64,000 nucleotides of DNA from Epithemia pelagica (GCA_946965045.2 OX337235.1:2542001-2606000), one strand, 5' to 3'. Positions 1,569 through 27,624 are shown, counted from the stretch's first letter. Program-made: numbers and translations. The notes: generated by a model not told the origin, from the letters alone.

Positions 1569-2996
1569 ATGACCCCGAGGGCGATCACATCAATGCACGA
1601 TCGACACGGCTATTTGCTGAACGACAGCCCCAACAACGGATCGAATACGAATGTTTATCCATCGATTCGGATAAGCTGTTCGACCACCGGAAAACAGTCC
1701 TGCCACAGCATGCAATCATCATCATGCGAACCAAAGCAGGAAGATATTGTAGACGAATCATTGATCACCCCTCATGAAAATGATGTGCTTTTGGGAAGGT
1801 GCGTTCCGTCTCACCTTGGCGGTGACTGCGTCGAAACTCTCGTGCAAAATCAGTTTCCCTTTCTCTTATCATTTCGTTCATTCGTTGTTTGCAGGGGAGG
1901 GAAAAACAACCAACACTCAGGCAATGAGAAGCTCCGGATTATAGCCCGAGAAGAGTACGGCTCGAAGTATAAGATGTCGTCCAAGAAAGAGAAATCCGCC
2001 ATGTCACGAGAGCTTGTGCGACAGGTGAGAGATTTAGAACCACCGGCGAGGTACGTGATAAGGATGGTGCGTCAGCTTTGTGAAACTTCATGTTTCTAAA
2101 CGAACAACCCTTTCAGATTTCTCAAACGCGATGGCCTTACTGGATCATGGGTTGAAGTCACGGATGATATTGCACGTGAAAAAGCCAGTCAAGTACTGCG
2201 GGATGCTGTGACTCTTCTTCCGGATGGTGAAAATCTAGATCCAATCTCAAACCAAGCGAGTCCTGTTCGTTCATACGAAAGGATACATCATTCTCAACAC
2301 CCAGGAGCTAGAAGCCCTGACTTTGTCACCACACAGGAAATAAGTCTATTGAGGCCGATAGAATCAGTGGCAACGTCGTCATCTTTCCCACCTCCCACTC
2401 CACTGGAAAGTTCTCGCAAACGCCATCGACCTCATTATAGTGAGGAGGGCCCGATTTATGTCCCCGACTATAGAGAACAGTGGCTTCAGAGCGCTCCTCA
2501 ACGGAGTCGTGTCGACCCGTATCCTGGCTACAATTACGGAGGACAAGGACATTTTGCTCCTCAATATGACACATTCAACACTTCGGCTCATCATACGGGA
2601 ACCAGCGAACAGGCCAGTATGTGGCACACATATCCTCCTTCTTTCCATGGTGCCGCACCATGGTATGATCATAGATCGATGGACAGCTTCATGCCCCCAC
2701 GCTCTTCCCAACCCGCCATGCACCCTCAAGAGCGCAATTCTTGGATGCCGCATCAATCGATTCATCCACAGCAGCAAGCTCCAAGAGACTACTCTCACCG
2801 AGTTGACTGGAAGGGTTCAAATCGTCCCGACTCTATAGTAGAACCAAGACAGGCTTCGGGTGCCTCTGCCTATGGAGTGGGTGGTAACAATTCAAATCTC
2901 ACCGAATTCGATCTGTACCATGGGGAGTTGCTTCATCCTTCCGATGAAACACAGCCGCAGAAGTCCGAATCCTCATCCTCCGCTTCGGCAAGGTGA
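1569..2996 (+). CDS. DUF6824-domain protein (paralogue A), 3 exons: 1569-1798, 1895-2050, 2117-2996
   Basis: Spliced product PHENDVLLGR|GGKNNQHSGNEKLR...PPAR|FLKRDGLTGSWVEVTDDIAREKASQVLRD. GT-AG introns 1799-1894 and 2051-2116 restore the frame. The start codon is inferred. Confidence 0.85.
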
Positions 2997-3788
2997 GGAC
3001 ATTCGCCAAGGCTATAGGTTATTCATACAGCCTGGACGTCGCTAGAGAACTAGGTCCTATGGAAGCAAACATGACGGCACAGATCTACCGCGCCGATCAA
3101 TTCTTGTAGGTCTAGAGGTACGACCGCAAGTAACATAAACTGTTACGCTTCTCAAGAATCACGACCTGCATCATTCCTCGAACCATTGAGAGATGAGAGA
3201 GAGCTAAGATCTAAGATTCATACTCATTTTACGTATGTTAATGCTCCCCCTAGAGAAAGAAAGCAAGAAGTCGAAGTCTATTATTTCTCGTATTGTAGAT
3301 GGCGTAGCTAGATGTTTAATGTTTATGCGCAGACTATGTGCTTATCCCGCGCCAACAATTTGTTTCGGACTTGCGCTTTGTCCGTCGGAAAGAAGCCGCT
3401 GGTCCTTCCCCGAACGCCCAGTCCCTTTTGCACATGCCCAACTGCTCCCAACAAGAAATATCATATTAATAATACAGCCCTATGTCTCCATGCAAATGCG
3501 CACGTGCGACTCCCAGTCGTAAGGTTACATCTGCTTGTTATGTGCAGGATGCAGCCACACAACGGGTTTTCTCAAGTCTTGCAAGTCATCTGGGACCAGA
3601 AGATTACCGTCTGATTTCTAAGTATCCATATTTTCTTCCTTCTCAAAACGTACGAGCGTTAACAGGCTATACTAATATGTGGGAACACCCGGCGTGCAAT
3701 TATGTGCACGAAACAAACTCTCACATTAAAAGCTCCGCTCCGCCCTCTTCGTCGACGGAGAGTTCATTCTTTGATGTACAACTCCGCC

Positions 3789-5431
3789 ATGAAAAGACAA
3801 ATTGAAACTATGCGCGGACAACACTTCTACTGGCAAAATGAGGGTACACCAATCGAATCAAGGACACATCTCCATCCACCGATGCGACTAGGCTATTCCT
3901 CGAGGGGGCATTACACCTATCCAAGTCCATATCACCAACCGTGCGCCATGGAATCATCTTACCATCATGCTTATCATGAAGGCCTCGTTATCGATGAATC
4001 GTTGATCAGCCCTCATGAAAACGATGTGCTGATGGGAAGGTACGCTTTAGTATCGCTACTCGCACCTCTGTTCTGATATTTTAGATTCGAAGGCTCACAT
4101 CGACCTCATTCATCTGTTGATCTTATTGCTTGGGCAGGGGTGGGAAAAACAACCAACACACTGGCAACGAAAAACTCCGAATTTTGGCGCGTAGCTACTG
4201 TTCGAAATACAGAGTTTCTTCAAAGAAGGAGAAATCAGCAATCTCCAGAGACCTTGTGCAACAGATGCGCGAACTACAGCCACCAGCGAGGTACGTCATC
4301 AGTAACACCACAATGTACGAAAATGCAGCTGATTGATCTTGGTTGGTGCTCACTCGACAATATTTTAGATTTTTAAAACGTGATAGCCACACCGGATCCT
4401 GGGTTGATGTCGGGGATGACATTGCCCGTGAAAAGGCAAGCCAAGTGCTCCGCGATGCGGTGGCTCTCATGCACGAAGATGGGTTGCCGGAATCTAGCAC
4501 CATTGTCGTCGCGGATCCTTCCTCGTCAGCAGGAGCCGACCAGGATCTCGCGGTACCAACTCCTAGTGCATCATGCTCAAAATTGCCGAAAGGATCAAGT
4601 CCAGACAGATATGTATCGCAAGTGACAGATTCAACAGGGTCTTCGACATCAGTTAGTCGACCACATTATACCCCTTCCCTTGTTGACTCGGTGAACACAT
4701 CGGCTTCATTCCCTCCACCGACTCCTGTTGAAAGTTCTCGAAAACGCCATCGATCACATTATAGTGAAGATGATAATGTTTTATTGCAAGAAGAGTGGCT
4801 GCAACCACATGGACCTTCAGTTGAAGATTGGCTGGAGAGCCCGTCCAGGCGACGGCGCTCGGATCCTCACCCGGGATATAGCCCCGAAACGTACAGTGAA
4901 CTACGACGGCACTCGGCGCCTCGATATGATACACCTGGTGACTACGCGTCTTCCTCGCACCATCACCACCACCGGCGCCTTAGCAGTGGTACTGACTTCT
5001 CAGGGGAGTCGCAACAACGTGAATGTTCCTCTGCCTCCAACAGATCGGATCGCTCCTCGTACTACTACCGTCAAGTCCCAAGCTCGATGCCACCACCACC
5101 GCCCTCTTCTTCTCAGTCCTACCGGCATGGATATTCTACTGGCCAACAAGCTAATTTTAGAGAATTCTCTTCTTCGGCAGTCTATCACGACGTCTATCCC
5201 CACCACCAACGCCATCACGGAGCCACATCTCAATGGAAAAAACAGCATCGGCCAGAGACTATCGCAGCGGCAAGACAGGCTTCCACAGCTTCCCATGGGT
5301 CATTGTTTGGAGAAGGTGGCAACAGTGGAGGCCTCAACGAGTTTGATTTGTTCAACGGGGAACTCCTGGACGATATGAACAACGAAATGTATCCAAATCT
5401 TGGGGCGTCGTCGTCAGCCTCACCACGTTGA
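3789..5431 (+). CDS. DUF6824-domain protein (paralogue B), 3 exons: 3789-4039, 4138-4290, 4369-5431
   Basis: PHENDVLMGR|GGKNNQHTGNEKLR...PPAR|FLKRDSHTGSWVDVGDDIAREKASQVLRD. GT-AG introns 4040-4137 and 4291-4368 sit at the same positions as in paralogue A. Confidence 0.85.
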
Positions 5432-5581: not shown

Positions 5582-6892
5582 CTACTGTTCGTCTCCACTG
5601 TTTCCCCTTCGGAACCATAATAGCGAACACAGTTTGGCCACACACATGGCTTGGAGTCTTGCGCAACCTACTAGAATTGGTTTGAGCAGTTGACAAATGG
5701 CGGACAACAGGTATTGAAATCCTGCGGCACCACCAGGCAAAAAGCTCACCAGGTAGTATATCAAGGCGAGGAGTTGCGCGCCGCTGGCACTCAGGACCAA
5801 CGAATATCCCGAAGCTCCTCCTCTTGTAAATGTGAAGTATAGAGTCAAGAACATGGATCCAAAATACACAAAGGTAAAATACAAGCGATCAGCCGACAAC
5901 ATGCTTTTGAGATGCTCAATGGGGCCTGGGTTTAACAAATGTCATTTATCGTAGCGATCGTATTTGTTGGTGGAATTGGATAGAACCAAAGAGCAACAAG
6001 GGAAACCAAAAGCAGTAGTTTAGAGTTAGAGATGATACCTTGCAATAAAAGAAAGATGATGCACACAAACCTGTTAATATGCCAAAGCTTGCCATAAACG
6101 TTAAGGATCCCATTGTCTAGAAGAAGTGACCAAGACATATGAATGGTGCAAAAGAACAACCCTCAACCAGCATTAGATCTTGAACTGCCATTAAAAGGAG
6201 TCTATATGATGGTACCTTTGCTCGTGGAACCACTTACAAAGCTTATGGCGAATTTTTGTGGCCGCGCCACCATAGTGGGAACACCGACAAAGAACGCCAA
6301 AGCAAAGAAGAGAGCCGAAAGAACCAACAATGCGCAAAACACCTGAAAATAATCTCGTCAGAAAAAAAAATTTTATCCAAAAAGTATGGATCCAAACCAA
6401 CCAGAGAACAAAACATTGAGAAAGGAAATCCAATCAGAACATCTGAAACTCCTGGATTTTCCCCAAGTTTATGAGAACTGAGGGCGGAGGTTTAAGATTG
6501 TTTGACGAATCTCTGGTATTTCCATAGCCTACAAGTTTGTTCGGTGGATATGGTCTCAGGGACAAACAAGATCCCAGACAGTGGCCTCTCGCAGTGTCAT
6601 TCTAGCCACTGAGTGACGTTTCTTCATCGTTCAAAGGTCGACTTGCCTGAAATCGTTGCTGGTACCCCATTCCCATAATTTGTTTGGGCATTTGAGATTC
6701 CATTGAAGCCTTCATATTGTTCCAGCTCAAGCCTTCCATGGTGGCAGGATCGATTTGGAACAATGGCAGCAGTTCAGTCCCTTCCAAACCCATCATCCAT
6801 GACGAACTGGAACTTGATCCCCCTTCGTCTTGCGCTTTCTTCTCTTGATACCATTGTCCAAATCCAGTCTGTGAGGATGAAGACGTCGACAT
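5582..6892 (-). CDS. SFT2: Got1/Sft2-family vesicle transport protein, 4 exons: 6892-6647, 6342-6238, 6116-6071, 5925-5582
   Basis: Spliced product MGYQQRFQ|VFCALLVLSALFFALAFFVGVPTMVARPQKFAISF|TMGSLTFMASFGILTG|PIEHLKSMLSADRLYFTFVYFGSMFLTLY...QLLALIYYLVSFLPGGAAG, which is the typical Sft2 four-TM pattern. Confidence 0.88.
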
Positions 6893-15891: not shown

Positions 15892-16473
15892 TGTCGTCGT
15901 CGTCGTAACGATGTAGAGCCAAAGACAAAACTCCACACTGTGTAATTGTGGTAACCAAAGGTTCTACAGTGTAGCCTTTTCAAAAGATGCAAGCGTTGAG
16001 GACGATAATGAGATTGTTGCTAGGAGTCTTCTCCAAGAGTAGTGTGTCCCTTGATTTATATAATAGAGTATCTTCACACCTCGCTGTCTTTTGTGTGTTC
16101 GGGGTGTGGTCTCTTTCTCTTGTGTTGGCATATCTTTCTTTGGCATTTCCACATTTCACACTTGCGTGGTCGAATGACGTCTCGTCTTCTGCAGTCTATC
16201 CGCGACCGACAGAAACTTTGCCTCGCCCGGCGCTCTCATGTGTTTCCTGGATTCTTTGGCGCGCGCCGATGGAAGGTGAGTCGTATATCCTGCGGCAACG
16301 GAAGGTCCTCACAAGATCCACACACCCACAGACCATAATCATTCGGATCCTGCTGATGCATTGCATCGTATTTGTGATCCAAAAGGCGGAGGAACAAAAC
16401 GAAACGGGGCCCACAAGTCTCTTTTGTCGTGGAACAGGAACGGAGGAGGGAAGTGGGTGTACTTTGAGAGGGC

Positions 16474-16491
16474 AGAGAGAGAGAGAGAGAG
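16474..16491. repeat. (GA)n microsatellite in the SPase/TM9SF divergent intergenic region
   Basis: cagagagagagagagagagg. Confidence 0.8.
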
Positions 16492-16595
16492 GTGAAACCA
16501 AACGAGCCAACCCACAACACGCATTCCATCTACAGGGTGGCACAAACCAAAGCAAAACAATACTCAAGGACAAAGAAAGAAGGAAGGATTCCACC

Positions 16596-19500
16596 ATGGC
16601 CCATGCCACCAGTGCTGCTACAGCACGTTCTTCGAGGAGGAGGAGGACAAGGATGACCAGAGTGTCGTTGCATCGGTTGCCACAAGGATGGTGGTGGGTG
16701 CTCCAAGTATGGGCGATGGTGCTCTGGTCGTTGTCCAACTGGTGCCGCATCGTCTTTGTTTCACCTGTACACGCCATTTACGTGGAGTATCACAAACCCC
16801 ACTCGCATGCCAAGGGTGATCGTCTGGACGTGGTGTGGAATACCTTTACCTCCCCCCATTCCTTGTCCACCATGGATGTCTCCAAATTGGCACCCTCCTT
16901 GTGGCCGCACTGTCGTGCTAAAAACGAGCCAGAGGAGGAGGAGACGGCGACGGCCACCCCGACTGGAACTGAGACAACCACCACAACGCCATTGCCAGAC
17001 GAACCATACTCGTCGTCATCACACTCATTGCGGAGTCGCGTCCCCTCCTCGCGATGGCAAGAAGCGGTCCATGCCTTGCATGGGGATTTTGTCGTGGAGT
17101 CGCCCTGGCCCATTGAGTTGACCGTGATGCAAGACGTGGCGTGTCAAGCCGCCTGTTGGGTGGATTTGGAACGCGACAGTCGTAGTTGGTCGGCCTGGCA
17201 GACCGTCTTGGAGCGGGCCATGCAAGCCCGCGTCCAAATCGATGACTTGCCCGTGGCCTATACGTGGCAAACGGCCCAGCAAATTTCCACACGCTATTGG
17301 GGTGGCATTCCGCTGGGAGAGAAACAACCAGACGATCTAGACGATGATGACGACGATGACTGGATGGACCGTGGACCCCAACGACAACGACGAATGGCCG
17401 ACGACTATGACGAATCCAACCAACGGCCACCGGGCGTGGTGATTTCTTCCACCCACGTTCATCCCCATTTGCAACAACAACAACAAACACTTCAATCCTT
17501 GCAGCACCAACAACAACAACAAGCATCACAGCCCAATTATCGCATTTACAATCATTGGAACATTCAAATTTGGGTGCGTCTCGTGTCGGGGGAGGAACCG
17601 GATGACGATGACAATGATCGTGATTCGAACCGTACCACCAACGACAATGACGACGACGAGGACACGGGCAACCGCACCACGTTGTCGACGGCACGCTATC
17701 AAGTCGTGCGCACCGTGATTGAACCACTCAGTCTCGGTCGCAACCTGGTAATGGTCAATACTACTACCAACAACAACCCCGAACAACCACAAGAACAAGT
17801 GCCCTGGGTGGAACCCGACACGTGTCTCGAACGACCCGACGGCGAATGGCAAACCCTGTGGCAAAGTACCAGCACCAATTCGACGGATCCCCAACGACGA
17901 CGCGCCCAAGTGTTGTTTACCTACAGTGTCGAATGGAATCTCGTGAATGACACCAAGGACGACGATGACAAATTCAAACGATGGACCGTTTTTTTGACCA
18001 TGGACCATGCCGTCCCGCGGTCCTTTCAATGGGCCGGACTCGTCTTGGCCTTGATTTTCAATCTCATATTGTATGCGGCCTTGATTGTCTGGGTCTGTCG
18101 CGATTTGAGTTACAAACCCATTTATCAACAACCATCCTCTTCTTCCTCCCGGCATGATGAAGATTGGGAATCCTCATCCTCCCTGGACCAGAACCAAACT
18201 GCCGCTGCCAACAACCACAACAACCACTCAAACAACAACAACAACAACAACAATATGCCATTTCAACGTGAGAGTCTTCCTCCCGACGAAGAATGGGCTA
18301 CCGATCCGGATTCCTTCGTCGACGAGGACGACACCAACAACAACACGACAGAGGAGGCGAATGATATTGATGCCGAGGAGAAATTGACCGACGAGGACGA
18401 CGTGGTTCTGGTTCGACCTCCCACCTTGGTCCGCCGTCCATCCAACTCTTCCTCCTCTCTGTGGACCAAACGGGTACGTACCGAAGTTCAATTGTGGCCC
18501 TTGTCGACCCAAGTGTTTGCTCCACCCCGTCATGTGCCGTGGCTCTTGTGTACCCTGTGTGGGACGGGTGGACACTTGTTTGTGACCACCTTGTTGTTTA
18601 TCATTTTCTATCGATTGGGCATTATCAATCAAAGCATTGGTCCCAACATTGTGACACCGGCCGTGGTCTTGTATACGCTCTTGGCACCCCTCGGAGGACT
18701 CGTGACGGGCCGCATGTCGGCCATGTTTCATGCCACCACGCAAGGGGCCCTCATCACCACGGCTCTCACGGCCCTGGCCTATCCCATTGTGGGCATGATT
18801 GTTGTGGGCTTTTGTTACAATGTCTTTCCCGATGACTATGCACCCAATTACAATGCCTGGGCCCATGGATCGCCTCTCCTCATGATTTGGATGTGGCTCA
18901 TTGTACCACTCACCATGGTGGGTGGATATCTGGGACAGTATCTCGGACCTGTCCGGGATTTCCCCATTGTCGCACGAGATCAAGGCTATCAAGAATTGCG
19001 TTTGTTGCTTCAAGAAAAACAAGAACGAGAGGATGATGAATGGAATGACTTTTATGACGACGACGACGACATGAGAGTCGATCCAACCACCAAATCCTCC
19101 GGCTTTGAAACAAACCATTCTCCGGGCAGCTTTCGCTACTATCTGGCTTGGATTCGTCATGCGGCCATTGTCTGTTGGAACAAGCATCCCACTACTTGGC
19201 GCACCATTCTGGTGGTCTTGACGGCGGGGATTCCACCCGTCTTGTGTTGTTTTGTGGCCTTTTCCTATGGGATTGCCGGTCCCGTCATTTTGGGATACTA
19301 TTCCTCGACCGAGGTCATGTCGATTGCTCCCTTTGTCTTGTTTGTTACCTGCGCCGCCGGTGTTTCCGTACTCTTGTATTACCGTCAACTTCGGTCCTAC
19401 CAGTACGCGTGGTGGTGGCCCGCCTTTGTCAGTGGCGGAGCCTGTGGCTTTCATTTGTTTCTCTTGACCTTGTCCTGGTTGTTTTTCAATGTTTCTCGAG

Positions 19501-21572
19501 GCAATGTCCCAGCCGGGACCTTTGCCATTTACCTCTTTTGGTTTGCCTACATTTGCATGGGCACGACCCTTGTGTGTGGTGCGGCCGGTGTGGCAGCCTG
19601 CATGATTTTGACGCACTTTTTGTATGTCTACAACAACACGGTCGATTTGGACCAGGAGGATGATCCCGATGTGTCGTCTGTGTATGGAGAAGAGGATGAC
19701 ACGGAGGATTTGGATCGACGAAACGACGAGGTTGGGACATTTGGGTTTGCGGGATTTGGTCGACAACTGGTCGGATATCATGGCAAGGGGCGGAGACACT
19801 CATCCTTGAGAATGATGACGACATCTACCACCACCACTACTACTACTCTGTCTCGTGTACCGGAAGAGACGGAAGAAGACATGATAAGCCGGAGTAGCAG
19901 TAGCAATGGCAGTCGGGCAGGTTCGCCTGTGGGGTCCTTTGCGGACGACCAATCGCCCGAGGCCAACAAGAATAGTGTCGGCCACCAAGGGCAACCATTG
20001 GACATGAGAATACCTCCACTGGCAACCCGTATATCCAGAAATTTGCTCTTTCATGCCATGGTCGAAGAAGAAAAGAGTAACAAAGACACGGACGGTTCTC
20101 GTCAACAGGATTATGCCATTTTCGAAGAAGACGATGGTGGCGCCGGTCAATTGATCCCTCGGCGGTTGCCCATGCTGGCTGTCCAGAATGAACAGACAAG
20201 CGCAAACGGCATGGAGGAGCTTGACCCTGTGGAACAAACGAGGAATCACCTAAATGCACCCGTTGTTGTCACACCGGAGGGCCGTCTCAGCAGCAGTCGG
20301 GGCTTTTCTCTCATGGAACGGAGCCCTTCTCTAGAGACTGGTTCCAAAGGCGTCGTCTTTGTAGATGACGACGAACAAACACAAGAGAGTCTCCAGTCAG
20401 ACGTTTCGTACAAGCACGATCGTATGGTGCACAACGATGAACCAATGCAAGGAGGACTTGTCGTCCCACAAACACCACACATTGACAATCGCACCGTCAT
20501 CCAGAACAATGCCTCCTACCATAACAGAGATATTCAAACGAAAATGGCAGAGGAAACCTCTGTGCGTGTGGGTGGAGTTCTTCCCCCTGTCCCGTTGGCC
20601 CACACAGCTGTCATTCCGAGCCGGGATCCACCACCTCCTCCTCCACCACCACCACCCCCATCATCACGTCGTAGTAAAAAGCGGCAGTTGTCATCTCGAT
20701 CCATACCAAACGTCATGGAAGCAACGTCCTCTCATGCTCATATTCCTACGCTTCCTACGACGTATGAGGATGAAGAAATGAGTGAACCTCATCGGTTTCC
20801 GCCATCCGACGACAATTCGGAATCCAGGTCATCCTCACAACCTTCTACTGCACAGCATACGTACAATGACCATAGCGATGAACCAGAGCCAGTTTTGGCG
20901 GAGGAGGATGACAGTTTGGTAGAATCACTACAGTTACCCTCGACAGTCGTAGATTCGGCACAAAAGTCTGTGTCATCCTGTCACACTCCGATTCCAAAAC
21001 AATCGAACAATGACTCTTACGATCAAGACGTGAAAGCAGCACCGCAGCCCCCATCACATGACAGTTCTGAATCGCAGCTGTCTATCGTCAGCTTGGCGAA
21101 ACAACCAAACAGGAGTACTTGTTCGGAGCCTGATCGGACGATTGGACAAGAGCAAGGGTACCAAGATGACCTTTCTGTGGCATCCAAACGTAGTCGAAAA
21201 CAGTCAGAACCAACAGCACAAGAAAACACAGATGAGGGGTCAGCACAGGTGCCACCCTCACCGTATGGCGACGATCCGAATTTTGCATTGTCATCGCCTC
21301 CGAAAAGAGAAGGAACGGACAATCTTCATAACGGATCAACGGCCCGAGATGACTCGACCAATCCTGAGCTGGTCGTGCAGGGAACCAGTAGCAGTATCAC
21401 CAATGGTAGCAATCCGTTGGTTGCGGGGAAAAGTATGGATGAACTCTCGATTGTGCGACTTGTCCCACGTCTTCGTGAGGAGGAGGGGTTTCTAGAAAGC
21501 GATGCATTACAACGCAAGGTTGACGAAACCAAGAGTCAAGAGGAAGGGAGCGAACGTTCGACTTGTAATTGA
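16596..21572 (+). CDS. TM9SF: Nonaspanin/TM9SF (endomembrane protein 70) with a long disordered C-terminal tail
   Basis: RVQIDDLPV, YRIYNHWNIQI, VLFTYSVEW, QVFAPPRH...LCGTGGHL and YYRQLRSYQYAWWWPAFVSGG, with multiple TMs. Start placed at ccaccATGG (16596) although the ORF is open from 15987. Confidence 0.85.
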   Translation: MAHATSAATARSSRRRRTRMTRVSLHRLPQGWWWVLQVWAMVLWSLSNWCRIVFVSPVHAIYVEYHKPHSHAKGDRLDVVWNTFTSPHSLSTMDVSKLAPSLWPHCRAKNEPEEEETATATPTGTETTTTTPLPDEPYSSSSHSLRSRVPSSRWQEAVHALHGDFVVESPWPIELTVMQDVACQAACWVDLERDSRSWSAWQTVLERAMQARVQIDDLPVAYTWQTAQQISTRYWGGIPLGEKQPDDLDDDDDDDWMDRGPQRQRRMADDYDESNQRPPGVVISSTHVHPHLQQQQQTLQSLQHQQQQQASQPNYRIYNHWNIQIWVRLVSGEEPDDDDNDRDSNRTTNDNDDDEDTGNRTTLSTARYQVVRTVIEPLSLGRNLVMVNTTTNNNPEQPQEQVPWVEPDTCLERPDGEWQTLWQSTSTNSTDPQRRRAQVLFTYSVEWNLVNDTKDDDDKFKRWTVFLTMDHAVPRSFQWAGLVLALIFNLILYAALIVWVCRDLSYKPIYQQPSSSSSRHDEDWESSSSLDQNQTAAANNHNNHSNNNNNNNNMPFQRESLPPDEEWATDPDSFVDEDDTNNNTTEEANDIDAEEKLTDEDDVVLVRPPTLVRRPSNSSSSLWTKRVRTEVQLWPLSTQVFAPPRHVPWLLCTLCGTGGHLFVTTLLFIIFYRLGIINQSIGPNIVTPAVVLYTLLAPLGGLVTGRMSAMFHATTQGALITTALTALAYPIVGMIVVGFCYNVFPDDYAPNYNAWAHGSPLLMIWMWLIVPLTMVGGYLGQYLGPVRDFPIVARDQGYQELRLLLQEKQEREDDEWNDFYDDDDDMRVDPTTKSSGFETNHSPGSFRYYLAWIRHAAIVCWNKHPTTWRTILVVLTAGIPPVLCCFVAFSYGIAGPVILGYYSSTEVMSIAPFVLFVTCAAGVSVLLYYRQLRSYQYAWWWPAFVSGGACGFHLFLLTLSWLFFNVSRGNVPAGTFAIYLFWFAYICMGTTLVCGAAGVAACMILTHFLYVYNNTVDLDQEDDPDVSSVYGEEDDTEDLDRRNDEVGTFGFAGFGRQLVGYHGKGRRHSSLRMMTTSTTTTTTTLSRVPEETEEDMISRSSSSNGSRAGSPVGSFADDQSPEANKNSVGHQGQPLDMRIPPLATRISRNLLFHAMVEEEKSNKDTDGSRQQDYAIFEEDDGGAGQLIPRRLPMLAVQNEQTSANGMEELDPVEQTRNHLNAPVVVTPEGRLSSSRGFSLMERSPSLETGSKGVVFVDDDEQTQESLQSDVSYKHDRMVHNDEPMQGGLVVPQTPHIDNRTVIQNNASYHNRDIQTKMAEETSVRVGGVLPPVPLAHTAVIPSRDPPPPPPPPPPPSSRRSKKRQLSSRSIPNVMEATSSHAHIPTLPTTYEDEEMSEPHRFPPSDDNSESRSSSQPSTAQHTYNDHSDEPEPVLAEEDDSLVESLQLPSTVVDSAQKSVSSCHTPIPKQSNNDSYDQDVKAAPQPPSHDSSESQLSIVSLAKQPNRSTCSEPDRTIGQEQGYQDDLSVASKRSRKQSEPTAQENTDEGSAQVPPSPYGDDPNFALSSPPKREGTDNLHNGSTARDDSTNPELVVQGTSSSITNGSNPLVAGKSMDELSIVRLVPRLREEEGFLESDALQRKVDETKSQEEGSERSTCN

Positions 21573-22407
21573 CGACTTCAAGATGATCTCTAGCTCAAAC
21601 TGAACTGACCAGATTGTTTTCTCGAGGAGAAAATCTAAATAATGGAAACTTCTGGCGGTTTACATAGAAAACTACGCGCAACGTTCAACTTGATGGTGAG
21701 TAATACTGTTCTACAGCTTGAATCAGCACCACTCGCTATGACGGGGTCCTCCTCCTCCAGTGTCCGGGGACGACACGAGTCAATGGTGAAGGGAAAGATG
21801 CGCTTTTTGGAAACTCTTTTCCACGTCAAACACAAGAGAATTCCACGGGCTTGACCCGACTCGAGCTTTTCGTGGTATTGTCCAACTTCGTCCAATGCCA
21901 CCCGATGGGCAATGTTTGGTTTTATTTTCTTGGTCTGCAAGGATTGGAACTGCGTTTCGACATTTCTCTGTAGGGGTTATAATAACAAGAACGATACAAA
22001 ATGCCTGCTGGCAGTACGGCAATCACCCATTCTTCAAGTGCAGTTTTCAGAACTGTGCAGACTAGGACACATATCTTGTAGACCTCTGGATTGCTTCTGT
22101 AGCTTTTCCACAGATCGACTACTTTGATGTTGGAGGAGAACATGGTATGGAACCGATCCAAGTGTGCCGAAAGGGGAGCGCCAAACATGTCCACTCGTTG
22201 TTTCAAGAGGGAAGACTTGCTGTAGCATATCAGAGAATGATCTGGTTTCAGACTTGCCAAAACGGTGGGAGACAACGACAATGTGTGGCCCACGCCGTCA
22301 AAGACCATGTCCATTTGACCTTGAAGTTCGGCGGGCCATTCCTCGGGGTTTTCGGGCAGGGGTTTGGCTCCCAGACTGGTCTTGATGTACAAGTGTCGAT
22401 TTTCCGG
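21522..22407. repeat. Direct duplication, copy 1 (TM9SF 3' end + intergenic + MDR gene 3' part)
   Basis: Begins gacgaaaccaagagtcaagagg and ends gtcgattttccgg. Colinear with 25425-26396. About 95% identical in the exon segments compared by eye, with deletions around 21717-21740. Confidence 0.95.
21635..22407 (-). pseudogene. 5'-truncated duplicate of the MDR oxidoreductase 3' half
   Basis: Encodes ENRHLYIKTSLGAKPLPENPEEW...VYK and QTKKIKPNIAHRVALDEVGQ. There is no 5' exon, the intron donor is changed GT to AT (TAC AAG ATATGT), and the native stop is deleted. Confidence 0.9.
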
Positions 22408-25400
22408 AGAGGAGCTCTCTGATGAGGTTGAAGGGGAACAGTTTGATGCCATTGTACGTGGATGTCTGATCTGGAGTGGTGGTGTGGTGGAAAAATTGAT
22501 GGACTTGTCGGATCAAACTTTAGAACAGCTGATTGAACGACTCCTACATATTACAAACTACTACAAGCAGCAGAATGCAATCATACTACTCGAGGGGCAC
22601 TATAGCATCTAGCAGATCCTCACTTGCCAATGCATGTTCCGTGTCGATGGGTCGGTTTCCCCTGGATGGGTTTGTTGGAATCTATCCATCAAAGGATTTT
22701 CGTCAATCATACAAAGTTATGAATTGGACAGACCGAGTCCAAGAAGACTGTACTTCCCTGTTTGTGCTTCCTGCCGAGGGTCAAGTTCAAGGCTTTCTTG
22801 GTTTGCTCGCGACGATCTGAAAAGCACTCTTCATCGGGGTTTCTCTCATAGAACCCTTGCCAAGGAATTGGCACACCTGTGCTCAAAGCACAAATGGTAA
22901 ACAACAATGATGCATTATCGTGTTTCGGCATGGGACACCAAAACTTCTCGTTGGACTTTTGGTGCACTTCTCGATGGGCAAAGGCAAGGCTGCCTCGAAA
23001 ACCCTTGACTTTCTTGCCATGCCCACTAACCGAGCAACTCCAGTCAATGAGGACAAACTTGTCACAGCTCTTGTCAAAGATGATGTTTCGAGCACAGACA
23101 TCCAAATGGAAGACTTGCCGTTCATTTGCAAAGTTCAACGCTGACTGGATATCTGTGTATAGACACTGAAGTTGCTCCGTATTAAGCTTGCCATTGACGG
23201 GCGATCCTTTTGGTGAGAACTTGAGGGCAGGGACGTTGATCGTAGTTCCTCGAATCGTGTAGCAGATGCTTCCGAAGTCTTTAAGCACAGGAATCGACGG
23301 TGGGCGGGAGGCAGGATTTTCGTTTAGAGCCCTCAGAGCTCTTAGCTCCCTTTCGATGTATTGCACCTCCCCAACGACAGAAGACTTCACTACGAATCCA
23401 TCATGCTTTGTTCCTCCATTTTCCTCCTCCTTTCCTTGGTACACAATCCCATGCGTTCCATATCCAATGACATCATGAAGCTCTTGCCGTTTTACCGGTG
23501 AAACTTGTGTAGATTGATTGTGCACATGGTAGCTGGCCTTTGCTGACAAGTCTCCACCGAAGAACTGCAACCCAAGATCTGTGTCGTCCGAGCAAACCAG
23601 TCTGAACAGCTCCTGCATCCCGATCGGTACAGTCTCATTGTCGGCAGGAAAAGGACAAGAAGCATTATCCGTTAGATAGGTTTGGTCGCACTCTTTTGTG
23701 ACAAACTTCTTCAAGGCAACCTCCGAAACCAAGGGGAGCATTCCAGATTGCTCGACATCCAGGGACACGTCACCGGTTTCCATTCCTGACAAGGTCATTG
23801 TTATCACGTCCAAATACACCGGAGTGATAGCCAGAGCAATGGACTTGAGATTAATACCCACTCCACAAAGATTGAAGGCAACAAGAGTCCGCTTCGCCAG
23901 ATGACCTATGCATTGCTTCACGGCCTCCATATGCGTCTCTTGGGGGGTTTTCTTCCCGCGTATAACGTTTTTGGCTTCCACAGGTAATGACATTTCTTGA
24001 GCAAGAAGATAAGGATTGAATGCCATGAGCTGATTGACTTCATAATCGACAAATCGCTTGGTACCAGAACTACCCACTTTTGGAATATAGTTCTCCCTTC
24101 GCACATCGGATCGAACCGCCGGTTCCAATGTGTACTTGGCACCTTCCTGTTGCCTTGCCTGCACCACTGCTGCGGCCACCGCGACATCCTGCTCGTTTCT
24201 GTCTTCCTCGTCGGCAGTTTCCTCGGCCGTGCCGATGAGTGACAAGGTTCGAAACAGACACGCTAGGATAGGCTGCACCGTTTTCTTTTCCACTGCCGCG
24301 TAGGATGGAAACGTGTATTCTCTTTTCTTTTGCGTATTCCATCCGAGAATGTGACTGACAGTCTCGCTGATTTCTGTGTTTGTTGGTTCCTCATTGATAT
24401 TTGTCTGTTCCATGGTGTCATTCCAAAAAGAGGCAAACTTGTGCAAATTTGGAGGTATTAGTATATCTTTTTTTGGAGGGGGTAGTGTATCTTTTCTCGG
24501 AGCGGTGAGATGTTTCTCGATCACCTGCTGTTCAGGGGTAGGGCTGTCGATGTGAACACCCCTCATCATGTCCTTAAAATCCTCTTCGGTGCATTCATCC
24601 TCTGTTGCAATGGCGGTTGATTTTATCTCTGTTTGGTTTGCAAAAGCAGCCATGATCTCGAGCTCGTTCCGCACTCCTGACAACTTATCCAGGGTCTCTT
24701 GTAGTGGCAAGGCAACCTTGACACTCAGAAAACTACATAGATGGATAAAATCATGACTTGAACAACTTTGCAAGTCCTGGATATATGGTAACTCCTGGAT
24801 ATCCAAGTTGGGGAATCGAGCTTTTAGACGGTTTAGATTGTCACCCGAGAGGAACTCCTCCAGACTTTCGCTTTGTCCTTCTTCCAATTCACTTCGCCCA
24901 GACGCACGACCACGTGAATAAGCCTCTTTAGTGACACGTCTGACTTTTGCATTCACGTCTTCAATTTGAGCAATTGTTCCCTTGGTTTCTTTGGCATGGA
25001 AGGTATGCAAGTGGCGTGTCACAGAATCTTCGTCCGAGTCTTCTTCTCGATCGCCGAGATGATCGCTTTTGCGCTTCCTGGTCGTGGTCAGACTTGTCAT
25101 GGTTGCTCTCGTGTCCCGCTTTTTTGTAGGCCGTAGTCTGCAATTGCTGGCCGAGTGTGACGGTTGAAGGTATTTGCCATTGCCAATTGCCTTTCAAGGC
25201 AGAGACTTCATTGGGTGGGTCGTCATCCATTCTCGCAACAGCGCGATTTTTATGAGAACGGCACCACAAAATCGCTTCGCGCAATAGACGCGCGCGATTT
25301 TCATCATCACTATGTGCGACCGGGGCCATAAATTGAAAGGGATAGCAAGAGTAGTTCTGCTCCAGTTACCTCTACCTCTAGCTAGTAGGAGTAGGAGTAG

Positions 25401-25424
25401 GAGTACCTCTAGTTGATTAGTTAC
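22408..25424 (-). mobile_element. Putative inserted cassette carrying the REase-kinase gene between ~0.9-kb direct repeats
   Basis: 3017 bp of unique sequence bounded exactly by the two duplicate copies. No transposase and no terminal inverted repeats were seen, so mobility is inferred from structure only. Confidence 0.5.
22707..25100 (-). CDS. Crinkler-like effector: PD-(D/E)xK restriction-endonuclease fold plus C-terminal protein kinase
   Basis: Intronless 797 aa. Nuclease motifs EKKTVQPIL...RFVDYEV...LPVEAKN...AVKQCIGHL. Kinase motifs IGYGTHGIVY, VVK, ERELRAL, HLDVCARNII, LIDWS, FRGSLAF and HDNASLLF. Basic RKRK at the N-terminus. Confidence 0.78.
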   Translation of the reverse strand: MTSLTTTRKRKSDHLGDREEDSDEDSVTRHLHTFHAKETKGTIAQIEDVNAKVRRVTKEAYSRGRASGRSELEEGQSESLEEFLSGDNLNRLKARFPNLDIQELPYIQDLQSCSSHDFIHLCSFLSVKVALPLQETLDKLSGVRNELEIMAAFANQTEIKSTAIATEDECTEEDFKDMMRGVHIDSPTPEQQVIEKHLTAPRKDTLPPPKKDILIPPNLHKFASFWNDTMEQTNINEEPTNTEISETVSHILGWNTQKKREYTFPSYAAVEKKTVQPILACLFRTLSLIGTAEETADEEDRNEQDVAVAAAVVQARQQEGAKYTLEPAVRSDVRRENYIPKVGSSGTKRFVDYEVNQLMAFNPYLLAQEMSLPVEAKNVIRGKKTPQETHMEAVKQCIGHLAKRTLVAFNLCGVGINLKSIALAITPVYLDVITMTLSGMETGDVSLDVEQSGMLPLVSEVALKKFVTKECDQTYLTDNASCPFPADNETVPIGMQELFRLVCSDDTDLGLQFFGGDLSAKASYHVHNQSTQVSPVKRQELHDVIGYGTHGIVYQGKEEENGGTKHDGFVVKSSVVGEVQYIERELRALRALNENPASRPPSIPVLKDFGSICYTIRGTTINVPALKFSPKGSPVNGKLNTEQLQCLYTDIQSALNFANERQVFHLDVCARNIIFDKSCDKFVLIDWSCSVSGHGKKVKGFRGSLAFAHREVHQKSNEKFWCPMPKHDNASLLFTICALSTGVPIPWQGFYERNPDEECFSDRREQTKKALNLTLGRKHKQGSTVFLDSVCPIHNFV

Positions 25425-26396
25425 GACGAAACCAACAGTCAAGAGGACGGGAGCGATCGTTCGACTTGTAATTGAGAATCTCAAGCAGAAGTCTAGCTCA
25501 AATGGGCGGACAAGTTTGTCTTCTCGAGGAAACAATCCAAACAATGGAAAGCATCTCGGCGATTTATGCACAAAACTACGCGCAACATTAAACTTGATGG
25601 TGAGTTATACTGTTCTACAGTCTTATGCACTACAACGCAATTATTCTGATGGGGGTTAGGGTTCCAAACCTTGACTACAAACACAGTCGCATGTCTGAAA
25701 GGAATCAGCACCACCGTCTCGTTAGTCGGTCGCAACGACGGGGTCCTCCTCCTCCTGCGTCCGGGGACGACACGAATCAATGGTGACGCGAAAGATGCGC
25801 TTTTTGGAAACTTTTTTCCACGGCAGACACAAGAGTATACCACGGGCTTGACCCGACTCGAGCTTATCGTGGTATTGTCCAACTTCGTCCAATGCCACCC
25901 GATGGACAATGTTTGGTTTTATTTTCTTGGTCTGCAAGGATTGGAACAATGTTTCGACATTTCTCTGTAGGGGTTATAATAACAAGAACGATAAAAATGC
26001 ATTTTGTCAGTACGACAATAACTCATTCTCCAAGTGCTTTTTTAGAACTGTGCAGACTAGGACACATACCTTATAGGCCTCTGGATCGCTTCTGTAGCTT
26101 TTCCACAGATCGACCACTTTGATGTTGGAGGAGAACATGGTTTGGAACCGATCCAAGTGTGCCGAAAGGGGAGCCCCAAACATGCCCATTCGTTGTTTCA
26201 AGAGGGAAGACTTGCCATAGCATACCAGAGAATGATCTGGTTTCAGACTGGCCAAAACGGCGGGAGACACTGTGTGGCCCACGCCGTCAAAGACCATGTC
26301 CATTTGACCTTGAAGTTCGGCGGGCCATTCCTCGGGGTTTTCGGGCAGGGGTTTGGCTCCCAGACTGGTTTTGATGTACAAGTGTCGATTTTCCGG
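25425..26396. repeat. Direct duplication, copy 2 (contains the functional MDR 3' exons and a dead TM9SF 3' end)
   Basis: Begins gacgaaaccaacagtcaagagg and ends gtcgattttccgg. Colinear with 21522-22407. Confidence 0.95.
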
Positions 26397-27624
26397 TGCC
26401 GTCACATAGACCTCGGCCTTGGCGCGTTTGCACCAATCGACGAGGGCATGGCCGACTCCATCCATGCCTCCAATGACGAGTACTTTTTGGTCGTCCATGG
26501 AAAACAACAAGTGTCGTCGAGAACCCAATTTCAAGCAATGGAGGGCTGTGGCATAAATGGAAACCATGCACACGGCTTCTTCTGGACCAATCTTGCGGGG
26601 GACGGGAATAATGGAATCGACGGGGACACTAATGAATCGACCATTCCCACCCGTACGGACCAATCCCACGACCAGTGCTCCCAGGGGAATCCTGTCGTCC
26701 GTGACGTGGTTGCCTCGGGCCACGACATGACCGGCAAAGTCATGGCCCGGTGTGACGGGCAAACTAACGGGATCCATCATGTTAAAGTCAAATCCACGTC
26801 GTAAGATACAATCTTGCATGGAGATTGTGGACGCCTGTTGAGGTACAGTGTATGTTAGATGACGATCATTATGCAGCAATAGAGAGAGACACAGAGTATG
26901 ATCCACACAGTTTGATCCACCAACGTACCACAATCTTGACCACCACATGATTGTCATTTTTGGGCACAATGGGGCCTGCTTCTCGTTGTTCCACCCGAAT
27001 GGATTCATAGGGTGATCCTCCAAAGGCTCGATAGACGGCCTGTCGTTGTTTGGACATGTCTTGTGGACTGCTGCTGATGCTGCTTGGTGCATCTTTCCCG
27101 CCATGGTTCCCCCGTGTAGTAGTAGTAGTAGTAGTATTGTTGTTCCCCGGTTGTTCAGTATGATGGTGGTCCCCTGCTGGAGATGGTTCTCCTTTTCGAC
27201 CAAGAAGTCTCCAATCACGTTTGGAGGTAGATCGGGCATGTTCGTTGTTGGAGGACTCGTGCGACGCATCGGCTTTCTCCTTGTTGTTGTTGTTACGACG
27301 GCTACGCGAGGTGGACGCACTCCGACGACGATCCGCTCGAGTGCTGGTGGTTGTCGGGTCTGTGTTCTCATCGTCTGTGGTTTCCGTGGATGGTGTTTTG
27401 TGAAGGGGTGGCCAAAACTTGCTTTTCCCTCCTCGACCCGACGACTGCTTTGTGTGGTCGTCGCTTGTTGTTTTTTGGACCACCGTTGTGCTGTGGTCGG
27501 TGGACTCTTGGTCCTTGTAATTCTTCTTTTGATGTCCTTGAAAGTTGACGGAAAGACCACCAAACATCCAGGACACGTCGTCGTCGTCGTCGGATTGTTT
27601 CGAGCGTGTTGTTTCCGTTGTCAT
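25722..27624 (-). CDS. MDR-family (quinone oxidoreductase/VAT-1-like) NAD(P)-dependent oxidoreductase, 3 exons: 27624-26929, 26834-26070, 25964-25722
   Basis: HVVVKIV|ASTISMQD...TPGHDFAGHV...GGNGRFI...EAVCMVSIYATA...VLVIGGMDGVGHAL...YK|RNVETLF...ARGILLCLPW. GT-AG introns 26928-26835 and 26069-25965. Confidence 0.87.

What the first reader, a model, noticed from the sequence alone, without database searches (positions are those of the whole stretch)
21522..26396. Nuclease-kinase cassette inserted with a ~0.9-kb 'giant target-site duplication' that spares both host genes
Seen: the order is TM9SF end -[A]- 3017-bp unique cassette -[A']- MDR gene, where A (21522-22407) and A' (25425-26396) span the convergent 3' ends of TM9SF and MDR. 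TM9SF uses its end in A and MDR uses its exons in A'; the reciprocal halves are decayed. The cassette has no transposase or terminal inverted repeats but encodes a putative endonuclease. Known: ordinary TSDs are 2-20 bp, and Crinkler-type REase domains are related to transposon nucleases. Inference: a selfish or effector module that spreads by nuclease-induced staggered breaks or circle integration, duplicating long flanks so insertion is harmless. Recombination between A and A' would excise it cleanly. This is the best candidate here for an undescribed mobile system.
Basis: partly seen in the sequence, partly recalled or inferred. Interest (0 to 1): 0.8.

Follow-up and report, generated by a model that had tools for sequence, protein, structure and literature searches.

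The report
Nuclease-kinase gene inserted with 0.9-kb target duplication
In a diatom, a 3-kb piece of DNA carrying an intact nuclease-kinase gene was inserted between two neighbouring genes that sit side by side in other diatoms, and about 0.9 kb of the target was duplicated on both sides so both host genes survived; other members of the same gene family carry the same kind of scar, but nothing yet shows that the gene moves itself.

Summary
A (21522-22407) and A' (25425-26396) are a real direct repeat, 91% identical and found only at this locus. They flank a 3,017-bp insert. In Phaeodactylum and in a second diatom contig, the MDR and TM9SF genes are direct convergent neighbours, so the cassette is a lineage-specific insertion with a ~0.9-kb target duplication. 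A second assembly, 0.6% diverged, has the same structure, so it is not an assembly artefact. The event is old (dS ~0.13).

The only ORF in the cassette encodes a PD-(D/E)xK nuclease domain plus an active-looking protein kinase. This is the known Crinkler-type REase-kinase module. The cassette has no transposase, no inverted repeats and no conserved ends. Its left 250 bp is a truncated passenger fragment of a TIR transposon.

The scar recurs. Host-sequence direct repeats of 0.1-1.9 kb bracket other family members: four of eleven loci in this genome, and three of eight loci from other organisms.

My best reading (0.6) is gene transposition by host break repair or replication with a long target duplication. 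This is a known kind (Arabidopsis transposed genes; 900-bp duplications of Dualen elements). Self-mobilisation by the encoded nuclease stays open (~0.2).

First readers of this scan noted similar brackets on other pieces of this genome, around nuclease cassettes and also around unrelated cargo. I did not test those notes.

The parts
15987..21572 (+). TM9SF (EMP70) gene. One long ORF of 1861 aa with a 690-aa low-complexity C-terminal extension. Its last 17 codons and stop lie in repeat A.
   Evidence: Pfam EMP70 E 4e-38 at residues 839-1170; translation; a gene call of 1635 aa with EMP70 in the second assembly.
21522..22407 (.). Repeat copy A, the left copy of the duplicated target. It holds the real TM9SF end, the spacer, and a non-functional copy of the MDR 3' part.
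21797..22407 (-). MDR 3' fragment copy inside A: exon piece 22075-22407, intron about 21968-22074, and a last-exon copy from 21967 downwards. The frames are open, there are many amino-acid changes, and the stop codon is lost through a 15-nt deletion.
   Evidence: tblastn of diatom MDR homologs; translations; dN 0.048, dS 0.133 against A'; gap list.
22408..25424 (.). The inserted 3,017-bp segment (cassette).
   Evidence: It lies between the repeat copies. It is absent from the MDR/EMP70 junction of Phaeodactylum and of a second diatom contig.
22409..22662 (+). Passenger fragment: the inner-truncated terminal part of a TIR DNA transposon family. It comprises 16 codons of that element's ~290-aa ORF, its 3' end, and a TIR with a 13-nt deletion.
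   Evidence: Matches to L023 (C18) at 85% and 69%. The ~160-nt end piece is dispersed and also lies 3' of every C11 paralog. The full element has 28-nt TIRs at L027 3362-6830.
22707..25100 (-). Intact 797-aa ORF. It has a variable N-terminus with an RKRK motif, then a PD-(D/E)xK nuclease domain, then a protein kinase.
   Evidence: It is identical in the second assembly (P0018).
23541..24308 (-). Restriction-endonuclease-like domain (about residues 265-520). Conserved residues are E271, D352, E375-x-K377 and Q396.
   Evidence: AF2 model with pLDDT 84 and pTM 0.82. VIA-align hits: BpuSI Z 9.9, DrdV Z 9.2, HsdR Z 7.3, and many REases, Hjc and NucC. Residues conserved in >=90% of 46 homologs.
22761..23498 (-). 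Protein kinase domain (about residues 535-780). Motifs are GYGTHG, VVK572, HLDVCARN (a non-RD type) and DWS/DWG.
   Evidence: Pfam Pkinase E 9e-5, below the cut-off here but above it in the C11 paralog. 39 of 46 homologs hit Pkinase. CK2 matches in PDB. Alignment.
25294..25386 (.). An ~85-nt dispersed element inside the 324-nt 5' flank of the ORF.
   Evidence: At least 8 copies at 80-90% identity on C1, C18, C11 and C8. No Rfam or tRNA match.
25425..26396 (.). Repeat copy A', the right copy of the duplicated target. It holds a dead copy of the TM9SF tail (25425-25475), the spacer, and the real MDR 3' exons.
25722..27563 (-). MDR (zinc-type alcohol dehydrogenase/quinone reductase-like) gene: upstream exon 26070-27563, intron 25965-26069, last exon 25725-25964, stop 25722-25724.
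   Evidence: Pfam ADH_N and ADH_zinc_N. Homologs at 50% identity in Phaeodactylum. Exon mapping.

Best explanation
The cassette is a DNA copy of a donor locus that held a REase-kinase gene with a transposon fragment just 3' of it. That copy was inserted once, long ago, between the convergent 3' ends of TM9SF and MDR. The chromosome was opened so that both broken ends kept the same ~0.9 kb. This would happen with widely staggered nicks, with breaks at different points on two sister chromatids, or with a replication template switch that re-entered 0.9 kb upstream. After fill-in or copying, the target flanks the insert as A and A'. Because the duplicated stretch spans both gene ends, TM9SF keeps its end in A and MDR keeps its last exons in A'. 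The spare halves drift.

Shown: the insertion, the target duplication, the composite content of the insert, the nuclease and kinase domains, and recurrence of the scar in the family.

Inferred: that host break repair or replication did the work (gene transposition with flanking repeats). Copies may have come from the family's tandem arrays, possibly as circles. In a gene-dense genome, mainly those insertions that duplicated rather than deleted their target would survive. Whether the encoded nuclease provokes the breaks is open.
For: Insertion:
- MDR and EMP70 are direct convergent neighbours in P. tricornutum (170-bp spacer) and in a Logan diatom contig.
- The same structure is present in a second assembly that differs by 0.6%.

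Age:
- A against A' gives spacer JC 0.23, intron 0.11, dS 0.13, dN/dS 0.36.
- The gene against its paralogs gives dS 0.21-0.23.

Not a defined element:
- No TIRs and no transposase.
- The left end lies inside a foreign transposon ORF whose TIR is internal to the cassette.
- Paralog homology ends ~17 nt outside the ORF on each side, and flanks differ.
- No shared termini among 7 bracketed inserts.
- Close dispersed paralogs are mostly pseudogenes.

Family habit:
- Tandem arrays at C11 (7 units), L036, L037, L034 and L043.
- Brackets of host sequence: L038 ~160 bp inside the RadA signal-peptide coding region; L042 ~300 bp starting with the first 15 codons of an ion-channel gene; C3 ~260 bp.

Precedent:
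- Transposed Arabidopsis genes, often from tandem-array families, are flanked by direct repeats that are single-copy at the orthologous target (PMC2869330).
Against: - The scar is enriched around this nuclease-encoding family. About 4 of 11 loci in this genome are bracketed, against 0 of 20 control ORFs (Fisher about 0.01, a small and partly post hoc control).
- It also recurs in other organisms. A purely generic accident does not predict that.
- No donor with matching flanks exists in the genome.
- The mechanism itself (stagger, two-chromatid break or template switch) is inferred, not observed.
- The survivorship argument is untested.
Confidence: 0.6

Rival explanations
1. Self-mobilising nuclease gene. 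The encoded PD-(D/E)xK nuclease (perhaps regulated by its kinase) nicks target DNA on the two strands hundreds of bases apart. A copy of its own gene is joined or copied into the gap, and fill-in gives 0.1-2-kb target duplications. This would be a transposase-free selfish gene of a new kind.
For: - Brackets of host sequence recur around family members that share only 24-30% protein identity, in this genome and in other organisms.
- 0 of 20 control ORFs are bracketed.
- The nuclease catalytic residues are conserved across 46 homologs.
- The family evolves fast, with dN/dS 0.5-0.65.
- An element with a restriction-like endonuclease (Dualen) is the one known maker of ~900-bp duplications (PMC9977147).
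Against: - There are no conserved insert ends and no target motif. The shared 10-mer at two repeat edges is within chance.
- The insert carries a passenger TE fragment, and its boundaries differ between close paralogs.
- Several copies have no bracket (C5a, C10, L039, L040), and most dispersed close copies are dead.
- There is no known way for a lone REase to copy its gene.
- Untested notes of this scan report the same kind of bracket around hAT, TIR and retroelement cargo.
- In Crinkler proteins this module is read as a toxin domain, not a transposase (PMC5289972).
Confidence: 0.2
2. Retrocopy made in trans by a non-LTR retrotransposon whose two strand cuts are far apart (Dualen or R9 type). 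A read-through transcript of the intronless gene was reverse-transcribed at a nick, and the distant second-strand cut gave the 0.9-kb duplication.
For: - Dualen insertions in Chlamydomonas give duplications with a median of 900 bp (PMC9977147).
- The gene is intronless.
- Homology among paralogs ends ~17 nt from each end of the ORF.
- One relative (L043) has a reverse-transcriptase ORF next to the family gene inside a tandem unit.
Against: - There is no A-rich tract at the 3' junction.
- The insert holds 324 nt upstream of the ATG that no paralog shares, and the inner part of a neighbouring transposon.
- No such LINE was sought or found in this genome.
Confidence: 0.08
3. Campbell-type integration. 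A circle that already carried the cassette plus a copy of A recombined with the chromosomal A, leaving A on both sides.
For: - The product geometry (A-insert-A') is exactly that of single-crossover integration.
- The family forms tandem arrays that can shed circles.
- A circle model was proposed for plant gene transposition (PMC2869330).
Against: - A occurs nowhere else in the genome, so no source is known for a circle joining the cassette to A.
- Other bracketed copies use unrelated host sequences, which would need a new homology-bearing circle each time.
Confidence: 0.05
4. Assembly artefact from merging two haplotypes at a heterozygous insertion.
For: Diatoms are diploid, and false duplications occur at heterozygous structural variants.
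Against: - A and A' differ by 9% with several indels, while the second assembly differs from the window by only 0.6% and has the same order over 21.5 kb.
- Both host genes are complete only in this arrangement.
Confidence: 0.02

Closest known systems
Transposed non-transposon genes with flanking direct repeats (Woodhouse, Pedersen and Freeling 2010, Arabidopsis; PMC2869330)
   Same: A normal gene appears at a new site. It is flanked by direct repeats made of host sequence that is single-copy at the orthologous site of a relative, in one case the 3' UTR of the neighbouring gene. The gene families involved form tandem arrays. No transposase or element ends are present.
   Different: The repeats there were mostly 30-400 bp; here they are 0.9 kb and span the ends of two genes. 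This organism is a diatom. The moved gene encodes a nuclease, and the scar recurs within one family and across species.
Dualen (RLE + APE) LINE insertions in Chlamydomonas, and R9 of rotifers (PMC9977147)
   Same: Variable, very long target-site duplications (median 900 bp for Dualen-4b, 126 bp for R9). They are ascribed to distant cuts on the two strands by an element that carries a restriction-like endonuclease.
   Different: Those are retrotransposons with reverse transcriptase and defined 3' ends. This cassette has no RT, no A-tail and no conserved ends.
Crinkler/CR-type REase-kinase C-terminal modules, e.g. CRN8 (Zhang et al. 2016, as summarised in PMC5289972)
   Same: The same two-domain order: a restriction-endonuclease-fold domain followed by a protein kinase. 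These modules are reported in free-living eukaryotes as well as pathogens and form lineage-specific expansions.
   Different: Pfam finds no Crinkler header here or in 46 homologs, and no secretion signal is evident. The N-terminus has a basic RKRK motif. The protein belongs to a free-living alga and there is no evidence of delivery into another cell.
Replication-based insertional duplications (FoSTeS/MMBIR) and capture of filler DNA at double-strand breaks (my own knowledge; not checked in a paper here)
   Same: A copy of a distant segment is inserted, with duplication of the sequence next to the breakpoint. The end points are arbitrary and the insert is composite.
   Different: Junction microhomology could not be tested because the donor locus no longer exists in recognisable form.
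Crinkler-like genes amplifying with adjacent transposons in free-living eukaryotes (PMC12957317)
   Same: A Crinkler-derived gene behaves as a selfish multi-copy locus next to transposons.
   Different: That case has an ADP-ribosyltransferase domain and hAT-mediated copying in fish. Here the adjacent transposon end lies inside the cassette and cannot have moved it.

Membership tests
PD-(D/E)xK restriction-endonuclease-fold superfamily | alpha-beta-beta-beta-alpha-beta core fold | tested here: met
   AF2 model of residues 215-530 (pLDDT 84, pTM 0.82). Best structural matches are BpuSI (Z 9.9, 157 residues aligned), DrdV (Z 9.2), HsdR (7.3), and then many REases, Hjc, NucC and Can2. Foldseek alone gave no hit at E<=1e-3.
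PD-(D/E)xK restriction-endonuclease-fold superfamily | Catalytic acidic and lysine residues on helix 1, strand 2 and strand 3 (E...D...ExK) | tested here: met
   E271, D352 and K377 are conserved in >=90% of 46 homologs. E375 is invariant in the 5-member close alignment. The residues sit on the predicted helix 57-85 and strands 135-142 and 158-162 of the model.
PD-(D/E)xK restriction-endonuclease-fold superfamily | Nuclease activity | not testable with these tools
   Needs purified protein and DNA substrates.
Eukaryotic protein kinase superfamily | Pfam Pkinase match and catalytic motifs (glycine loop, VxK, HxDxxxxN, DxG) | tested here: met
   The window copy scores 22.5 bits, below the 31.7 cut-off. 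The C11 paralog scores 33.0, and 39 of 46 homologs match. The motifs GYGTHG, VVK572, HLDVCARN and DWS/DWG are invariant in the family alignment.
Crinkler (CRN/CR) effectors | N-terminal header (Ubl-type, LxLFLAK region) used for delivery | tested here: not met
   No Pfam family other than kinases in this protein or in 46 homologs. N-termini vary between relatives. Remote header similarity was not probed by structure.
Crinkler (CRN/CR) effectors | C-terminal toxin module of REase plus kinase | tested here: met
   Domain order shown. The architecture is described in PMC5289972, citing Zhang et al. 2016.
Class II (cut-and-paste) DNA transposon | Terminal inverted repeats, a transposase, a short duplication of fixed length, and ends conserved between copies | tested here: not met
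   No inverted repeats. No transposase family. Duplications range from 0.1 to 1.9 kb. No shared termini.
LINE-mediated retrocopy | A-rich 3' tail or LINE 3' end at the junction, with the copy limited to the transcript | tested here: not met
   No A/T run at 22408-22706. The insert includes a neighbouring transposon's inner part and 324 nt of unshared upstream DNA. Whether that DNA is transcribed is unknown.
Transposed gene with flanking repeats (sensu PMC2869330) | The gene is absent from the orthologous interval of relatives, while its neighbours are adjacent there | tested here: met
   Phaeodactylum CM000616.1 and a Logan diatom contig have MDR next to EMP70 with nothing between.
Transposed gene with flanking repeats (sensu PMC2869330) | The flanking direct repeat is made of target (host) sequence, and paralogs exist elsewhere, often in tandem arrays | tested here: met
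   A/A' carries the TM9SF tail and the MDR 3' exons. Paralogs include a 7-unit array on C11.

The most novel reading that the evidence does not exclude
REase-kinase genes of diatoms are autonomous, transposase-free mobile genes. Their own restriction-type nuclease opens the target with cuts hundreds of bases apart, and a gene copy is installed there. This leaves 0.1-2-kb target duplications that keep the neighbouring host genes intact. It would be a new class of eukaryotic selfish element, and a link between Crinkler-type toxin modules and mobility.
Probability: 0.18. Interest if true: 0.9.

Novelty: new variant of a known kind. Interest (0 to 1): 0.58.

Why it matters
This is a clean, outgroup-anchored example of a gene landing between two conserved neighbours. 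The target duplication is large enough to rebuild both gene ends. It shows one way a compact genome can accept new genes without losing old ones.

The same scar appears around other members of a nuclease-encoding family, in this diatom and in others. This gives a directly testable question: do these Crinkler-type nuclease genes provoke their own spread, or do diatoms repair breaks in a way that makes long target duplications for any cargo? Either answer would be new for diatoms. The first would define a new kind of mobile gene.

Tried and rejected
- Assembly artefact: rejected. The second assembly has the same order, and A/A' differ far more than the haplotypes do.
- tRNA or known RNA in the region: none found.
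- Poly(A) signature of a retrocopy: none.
- Transposon-mediated movement by the adjacent TIR element: rejected, because its terminus lies inside the cassette and its inner end is the truncated one.
- Cassette ancestral with later duplication of A: rejected by the empty junctions in two other diatoms.
- Extant donor: none. The best paralogs are 82-87% identical in the ORF only. Only the C11 array shares the 3' flank, and none shares the 5' flank.
- Shared 10-mer CAACGCAAGG at repeat edges of the window and L038: judged chance. About 0.65 shared 10-mers are expected among the 17 boundary windows compared.
- Conserved insert termini: none.
- Crinkler header by Pfam: none.
- Empty alleles through neighbour proteins in the ENA assembly: nothing on record.
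The control is therefore only 20 ORFs.
- Zhang et al. 2016 is not held in the library. Its content is cited through PMC5289972.
- The spliced MDR model was never searched as a joined protein. Exon pieces were handled by reference, and they were combined only for the dN/dS count.

Full report
**1. Observation**

The direct repeat is real. A (21522-22407) and A' (25425-26396) align over 877 columns at 91% identity. Identity by block:
- TM9SF tail: 94%
- spacer between the two stop codons: 80% (JC 0.23)
- MDR intron: 89.5% (JC 0.11)
- MDR exon pieces: 93-95%

A lacks 78-nt and 15-nt pieces that A' has, and A' lacks 6 nt in frame. The longest identical run is 99 nt. The repeat occurs nowhere else in the 60.5-Mb, 23-contig assembly. 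The window is C8:2542001-2606000. No inverted repeats bound the 3,017-bp insert.

**2. Host genes**

The + strand ORF 15987-21572 (1861 aa) has an EMP70 domain and a long low-complexity C-terminal extension. Its last 17 codons and stop lie in A.

The - strand MDR gene has ADH_N and ADH_zinc_N domains. Its nearest named relative is in Phaeodactylum, at 50% identity. Mapping diatom homologs exon by exon gives this model:
- upstream exon down to 26070
- intron 25965-26069, which contains the in-frame stop at 26007
- last exon 25725-25964, which has the usual MDR C-terminus

The spare halves are only partly decayed. The MDR fragment in A keeps both exon pieces open and its splice sites. It has dN 0.048 and dS 0.133 against A' (dN/dS 0.36) and has lost its stop codon through the 15-nt deletion. 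The TM9SF tail copy in A' is still open. I did not search with a joined MDR protein model.

**3. It is an insertion, and not an artefact**

In Phaeodactylum tricornutum (CM000616.1), the MDR gene is followed directly by a convergent EMP70 gene, 170 bp away. A Logan diatom contig shows the same adjacency. The neighbours are therefore ancestral, and the cassette arrived later in this lineage.

A second assembly (ENA ERZ21939226, a 1.25-Mb contig) matches window 16007-37560 at 99.41% identity. It has the same MDR, 797-aa gene, EMP70 order. A and A' differ fifteen times more than these two sequences do. A haplotype-merge artefact is therefore excluded, and no empty allele is seen. The divergence values make the event old, and roughly as old as the split of the cassette gene from its paralogs (dS 0.21-0.23 to the C11 and C3 copies).

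**4. What the cassette contains**

Its only long ORF (22707-25100, - strand, 797 aa) has three parts.
- The N-terminus is variable and carries an RKRK motif.
- The middle domain folds with confidence (pLDDT 84, pTM 0.82) into an alpha-beta-beta-beta-alpha-beta core. By VIA-align, its best structural matches are restriction endonucleases and relatives: BpuSI Z 9.9, DrdV Z 9.2, HsdR Z 7.3, then NgoMIV, Bse634I, SgrAI, Hjc, NucC and Can2. Foldseek alone gave nothing below E 1e-3. E271, D352, K377 and Q396 are conserved in at least 90% of 46 homologs. E375 is invariant among close relatives. This is the E...D...ExK signature.
- The C-terminal domain is a protein kinase with intact glycine loop, VxK, HLDxxxxN and DWG/S motifs.

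A profile search found 591 cluster representatives, most of them matching residues 325-780. The nuclease-kinase pair is thus the conserved module, under varying N-termini. One named relative is from Fragilaria crotonensis. This is the REase-plus-kinase architecture described for about one sixth of Crinkler-type C-termini, including CRN8 (PMC5289972, citing Zhang et al. 2016). Pfam finds no Crinkler header here or in 46 homologs. I therefore call it a Crinkler-type module, not a Crinkler effector.

**5. The cassette is composite and has no element ends**

- Positions 22409-22460 are 16 codons from the C-terminus of a ~290-aa ORF family.
- Positions 22499-22662 are that element's 3' end.
- The ORF belongs to a 3.47-kb transposon with 28-nt terminal inverted repeats. 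Its copies on C7, C16 and C17 are 98.5-99.8% identical.
- Its terminal ~160 nt is dispersed in the genome. The same piece sits at the same place, about 45 nt past the stop codon, behind every kinase copy of the C11 array.

The donor was therefore a kinase gene with this transposon inserted just downstream. The copied segment was cut inside the transposon's ORF. The transposon terminus is internal to the cassette, so its transposase did not move the cassette.

On the other side, the 324 nt upstream of the ATG matches no paralog. It holds an ~85-nt element with at least eight copies in the genome.

Among paralogs, homology stops about 17 nt past the stop codon and about 17 nt before the ATG. Different subgroups share different flanks.

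**6. The family**

Close paralogs (about 82% nucleotide identity) are:
- a seven-unit tandem array on C11 with an 8.2-kb period, all copies intact
- one copy on C3, with one stop codon
- two copies on C5, frameshifted or fragmented
- one copy on C10, heavily decayed

dN/dS between copies is 0.5-0.65. Six more distant paralogs (24-31% protein identity) lie on C5, C13 and C17.

**7.

Loci with direct repeats that bracket a family member:

| Locus | Repeat | Notes |
|---|---|---|
| C3 copy | ~260 bp, patchy | Abuts the gene's 3' end; unique to that locus |
| L038, distant paralog on C5 | ~160 bp, 92% identical, sharp ends | The left copy lies in the 5' coding region of a RadA/Sms-like gene. The right copy keeps a native-looking start codon and signal peptide and then stops. 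So a 2.8-kb insert landed inside RadA's signal-peptide region with a target duplication. A third copy of that 160 bp lies 8.5 kb away and could not be fetched. |
| L035 | 97 nt, 75% | |
| L033, metagenome contig from another organism | 94-nt bracket running into the contig end | |
| L042, contig from another organism | ~300 bp | The right copy begins with an exact copy of the first 15 codons of the neighbouring ion-channel gene plus its upstream DNA |
| L041, Fragilaria | 1.9 kb | The repeat holds a paralogous gene, so this case is ambiguous |

Other loci are tandem arrays (C11, L036, L037, L034, L043) or show no bracket (C5a, C10, L039, L040).

In the roughly 250 kb of this genome that I hold, 0 of 20 non-family ORFs of at least 400 aa are bracketed. 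For the family, 2 of 8 loci are bracketed by the same strict rule and about 4 of 11 by a relaxed one (Fisher about 0.01). The other direct-repeat pairs seen in about 200 kb of that DNA were tandem paralogs or repeats inside one long ORF, plus one pair upstream of the C10 pseudogene (L017) that does not bracket it and was not characterised. The control is small, and I could not enlarge it.

**8. No sign of a specific machine**

The seven bracketed inserts share no terminal sequences. A 10-mer shared by repeat edges in the window and L038 is within chance, given the number of comparisons.

**9. Comparison with what is known**

Long target duplications are not unheard of.
- Transposed, non-transposon genes of Arabidopsis are often flanked by direct repeats that are single-copy at the orthologous site. 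The families involved are prone to tandem arrays, and the authors considered long target duplication or circle insertion (PMC2869330).
- Dualen LINEs of Chlamydomonas, which carry a restriction-like endonuclease, give duplications with a median of 900 bp (PMC9977147).

**10. Leads from other notes of this scan**

Other first-reader notes on this genome report nuclease cassettes bracketed by ~130-bp and ~270-bp repeats (s1-238932, s1-230635). They also report a hAT element, a TIR element, a retroelement block and other cargo bracketed by 0.2 kb to several kb (s1-248571, s1-248390, s1-257165, s1-230605). I could not test these. If true, they favour a genome-wide repair habit over a family-specific engine.

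**11. Verdict**

The nuclease is real. The claim of a new nuclease-driven mobile system is not shown, but it is not excluded either.

| Reading | Confidence |
|---|---|
| Gene transposition by host break repair or replication, with copies perhaps shed from the family's tandem arrays, and with survival of duplicating insertions favoured in a compact genome | 0.6 |
| Self-mobilisation by the encoded nuclease | about 0.2 |
| Retrocopying by a Dualen-like element | about 0.08 |
| Circle integration by homology | about 0.05 |
| Assembly artefact | about 0.02 |

The gene is intact and belongs to a free-living alga.

Noticed in passing
L027:3362-6830 (G000 C7), also L026, L028, L029: A 3.47-kb DNA transposon with 28-nt terminal inverted repeats (93% complementary) and a ~280-aa ORF with no Pfam family. 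It has an internal array of 19-nt palindromic units. Copies on C7, C16 and C17 are 98.5-99.8% identical, so it was recently active. No transposase was recognised in it.
   Followed up: partly
window 25294-25386; L024:4532-4618; L025:4748-4831: An ~85-nt dispersed element with at least 8 copies at 80-90% identity. It has no tRNA or Rfam match and its nature is unknown. In two of the three loci looked at, it lies 110-190 nt upstream of an ORF start.
   Followed up: partly
G000 C11:1423608-1475379 (L018, L019): Seven tandem units, with an 8.2-kb period, each holding an intact REase-kinase paralog. The units are 99-100% identical to each other.
   Followed up: partly
L038:2900-3384: After the insertion, the RadA/Sms-like gene reads on into insert sequence. 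It has a new upstream ATG at 3146 and a new N-terminal extension. Its original start and signal peptide sit stranded at 5885-6076.
   Followed up: partly
L043:1-12865 (ENA ERZ28594515): A perfect 8,465-bp tandem repeat. Its unit holds a family gene, a 282-aa reverse-transcriptase ORF and a 569-aa ORF with a faint PIN7 hit.
   Followed up: no
window 19497-21572: The TM9SF ORF continues for about 690 codons past the end of the EMP70 domain, as low-complexity, Ser/Asp/Pro-rich sequence. Phaeodactylum's TM9SF is only 682 aa in all.
   Followed up: no
all close paralogs: window 25117; L014 ~6256; L018 ~7170: Homology between paralogs breaks at the same point, about 17 nt upstream of the ATG, after the shared motif GGGACACGAGAGC. 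This suggests a recurrent breakpoint or a very short conserved leader.
   Followed up: partly
window 1569-5431 and 46609-52278: The first range holds a pair of tandem paralogous ORFs about 2.2 kb apart. The second is a 1889-aa ORF with internal 80-nt repeats.
   Followed up: no
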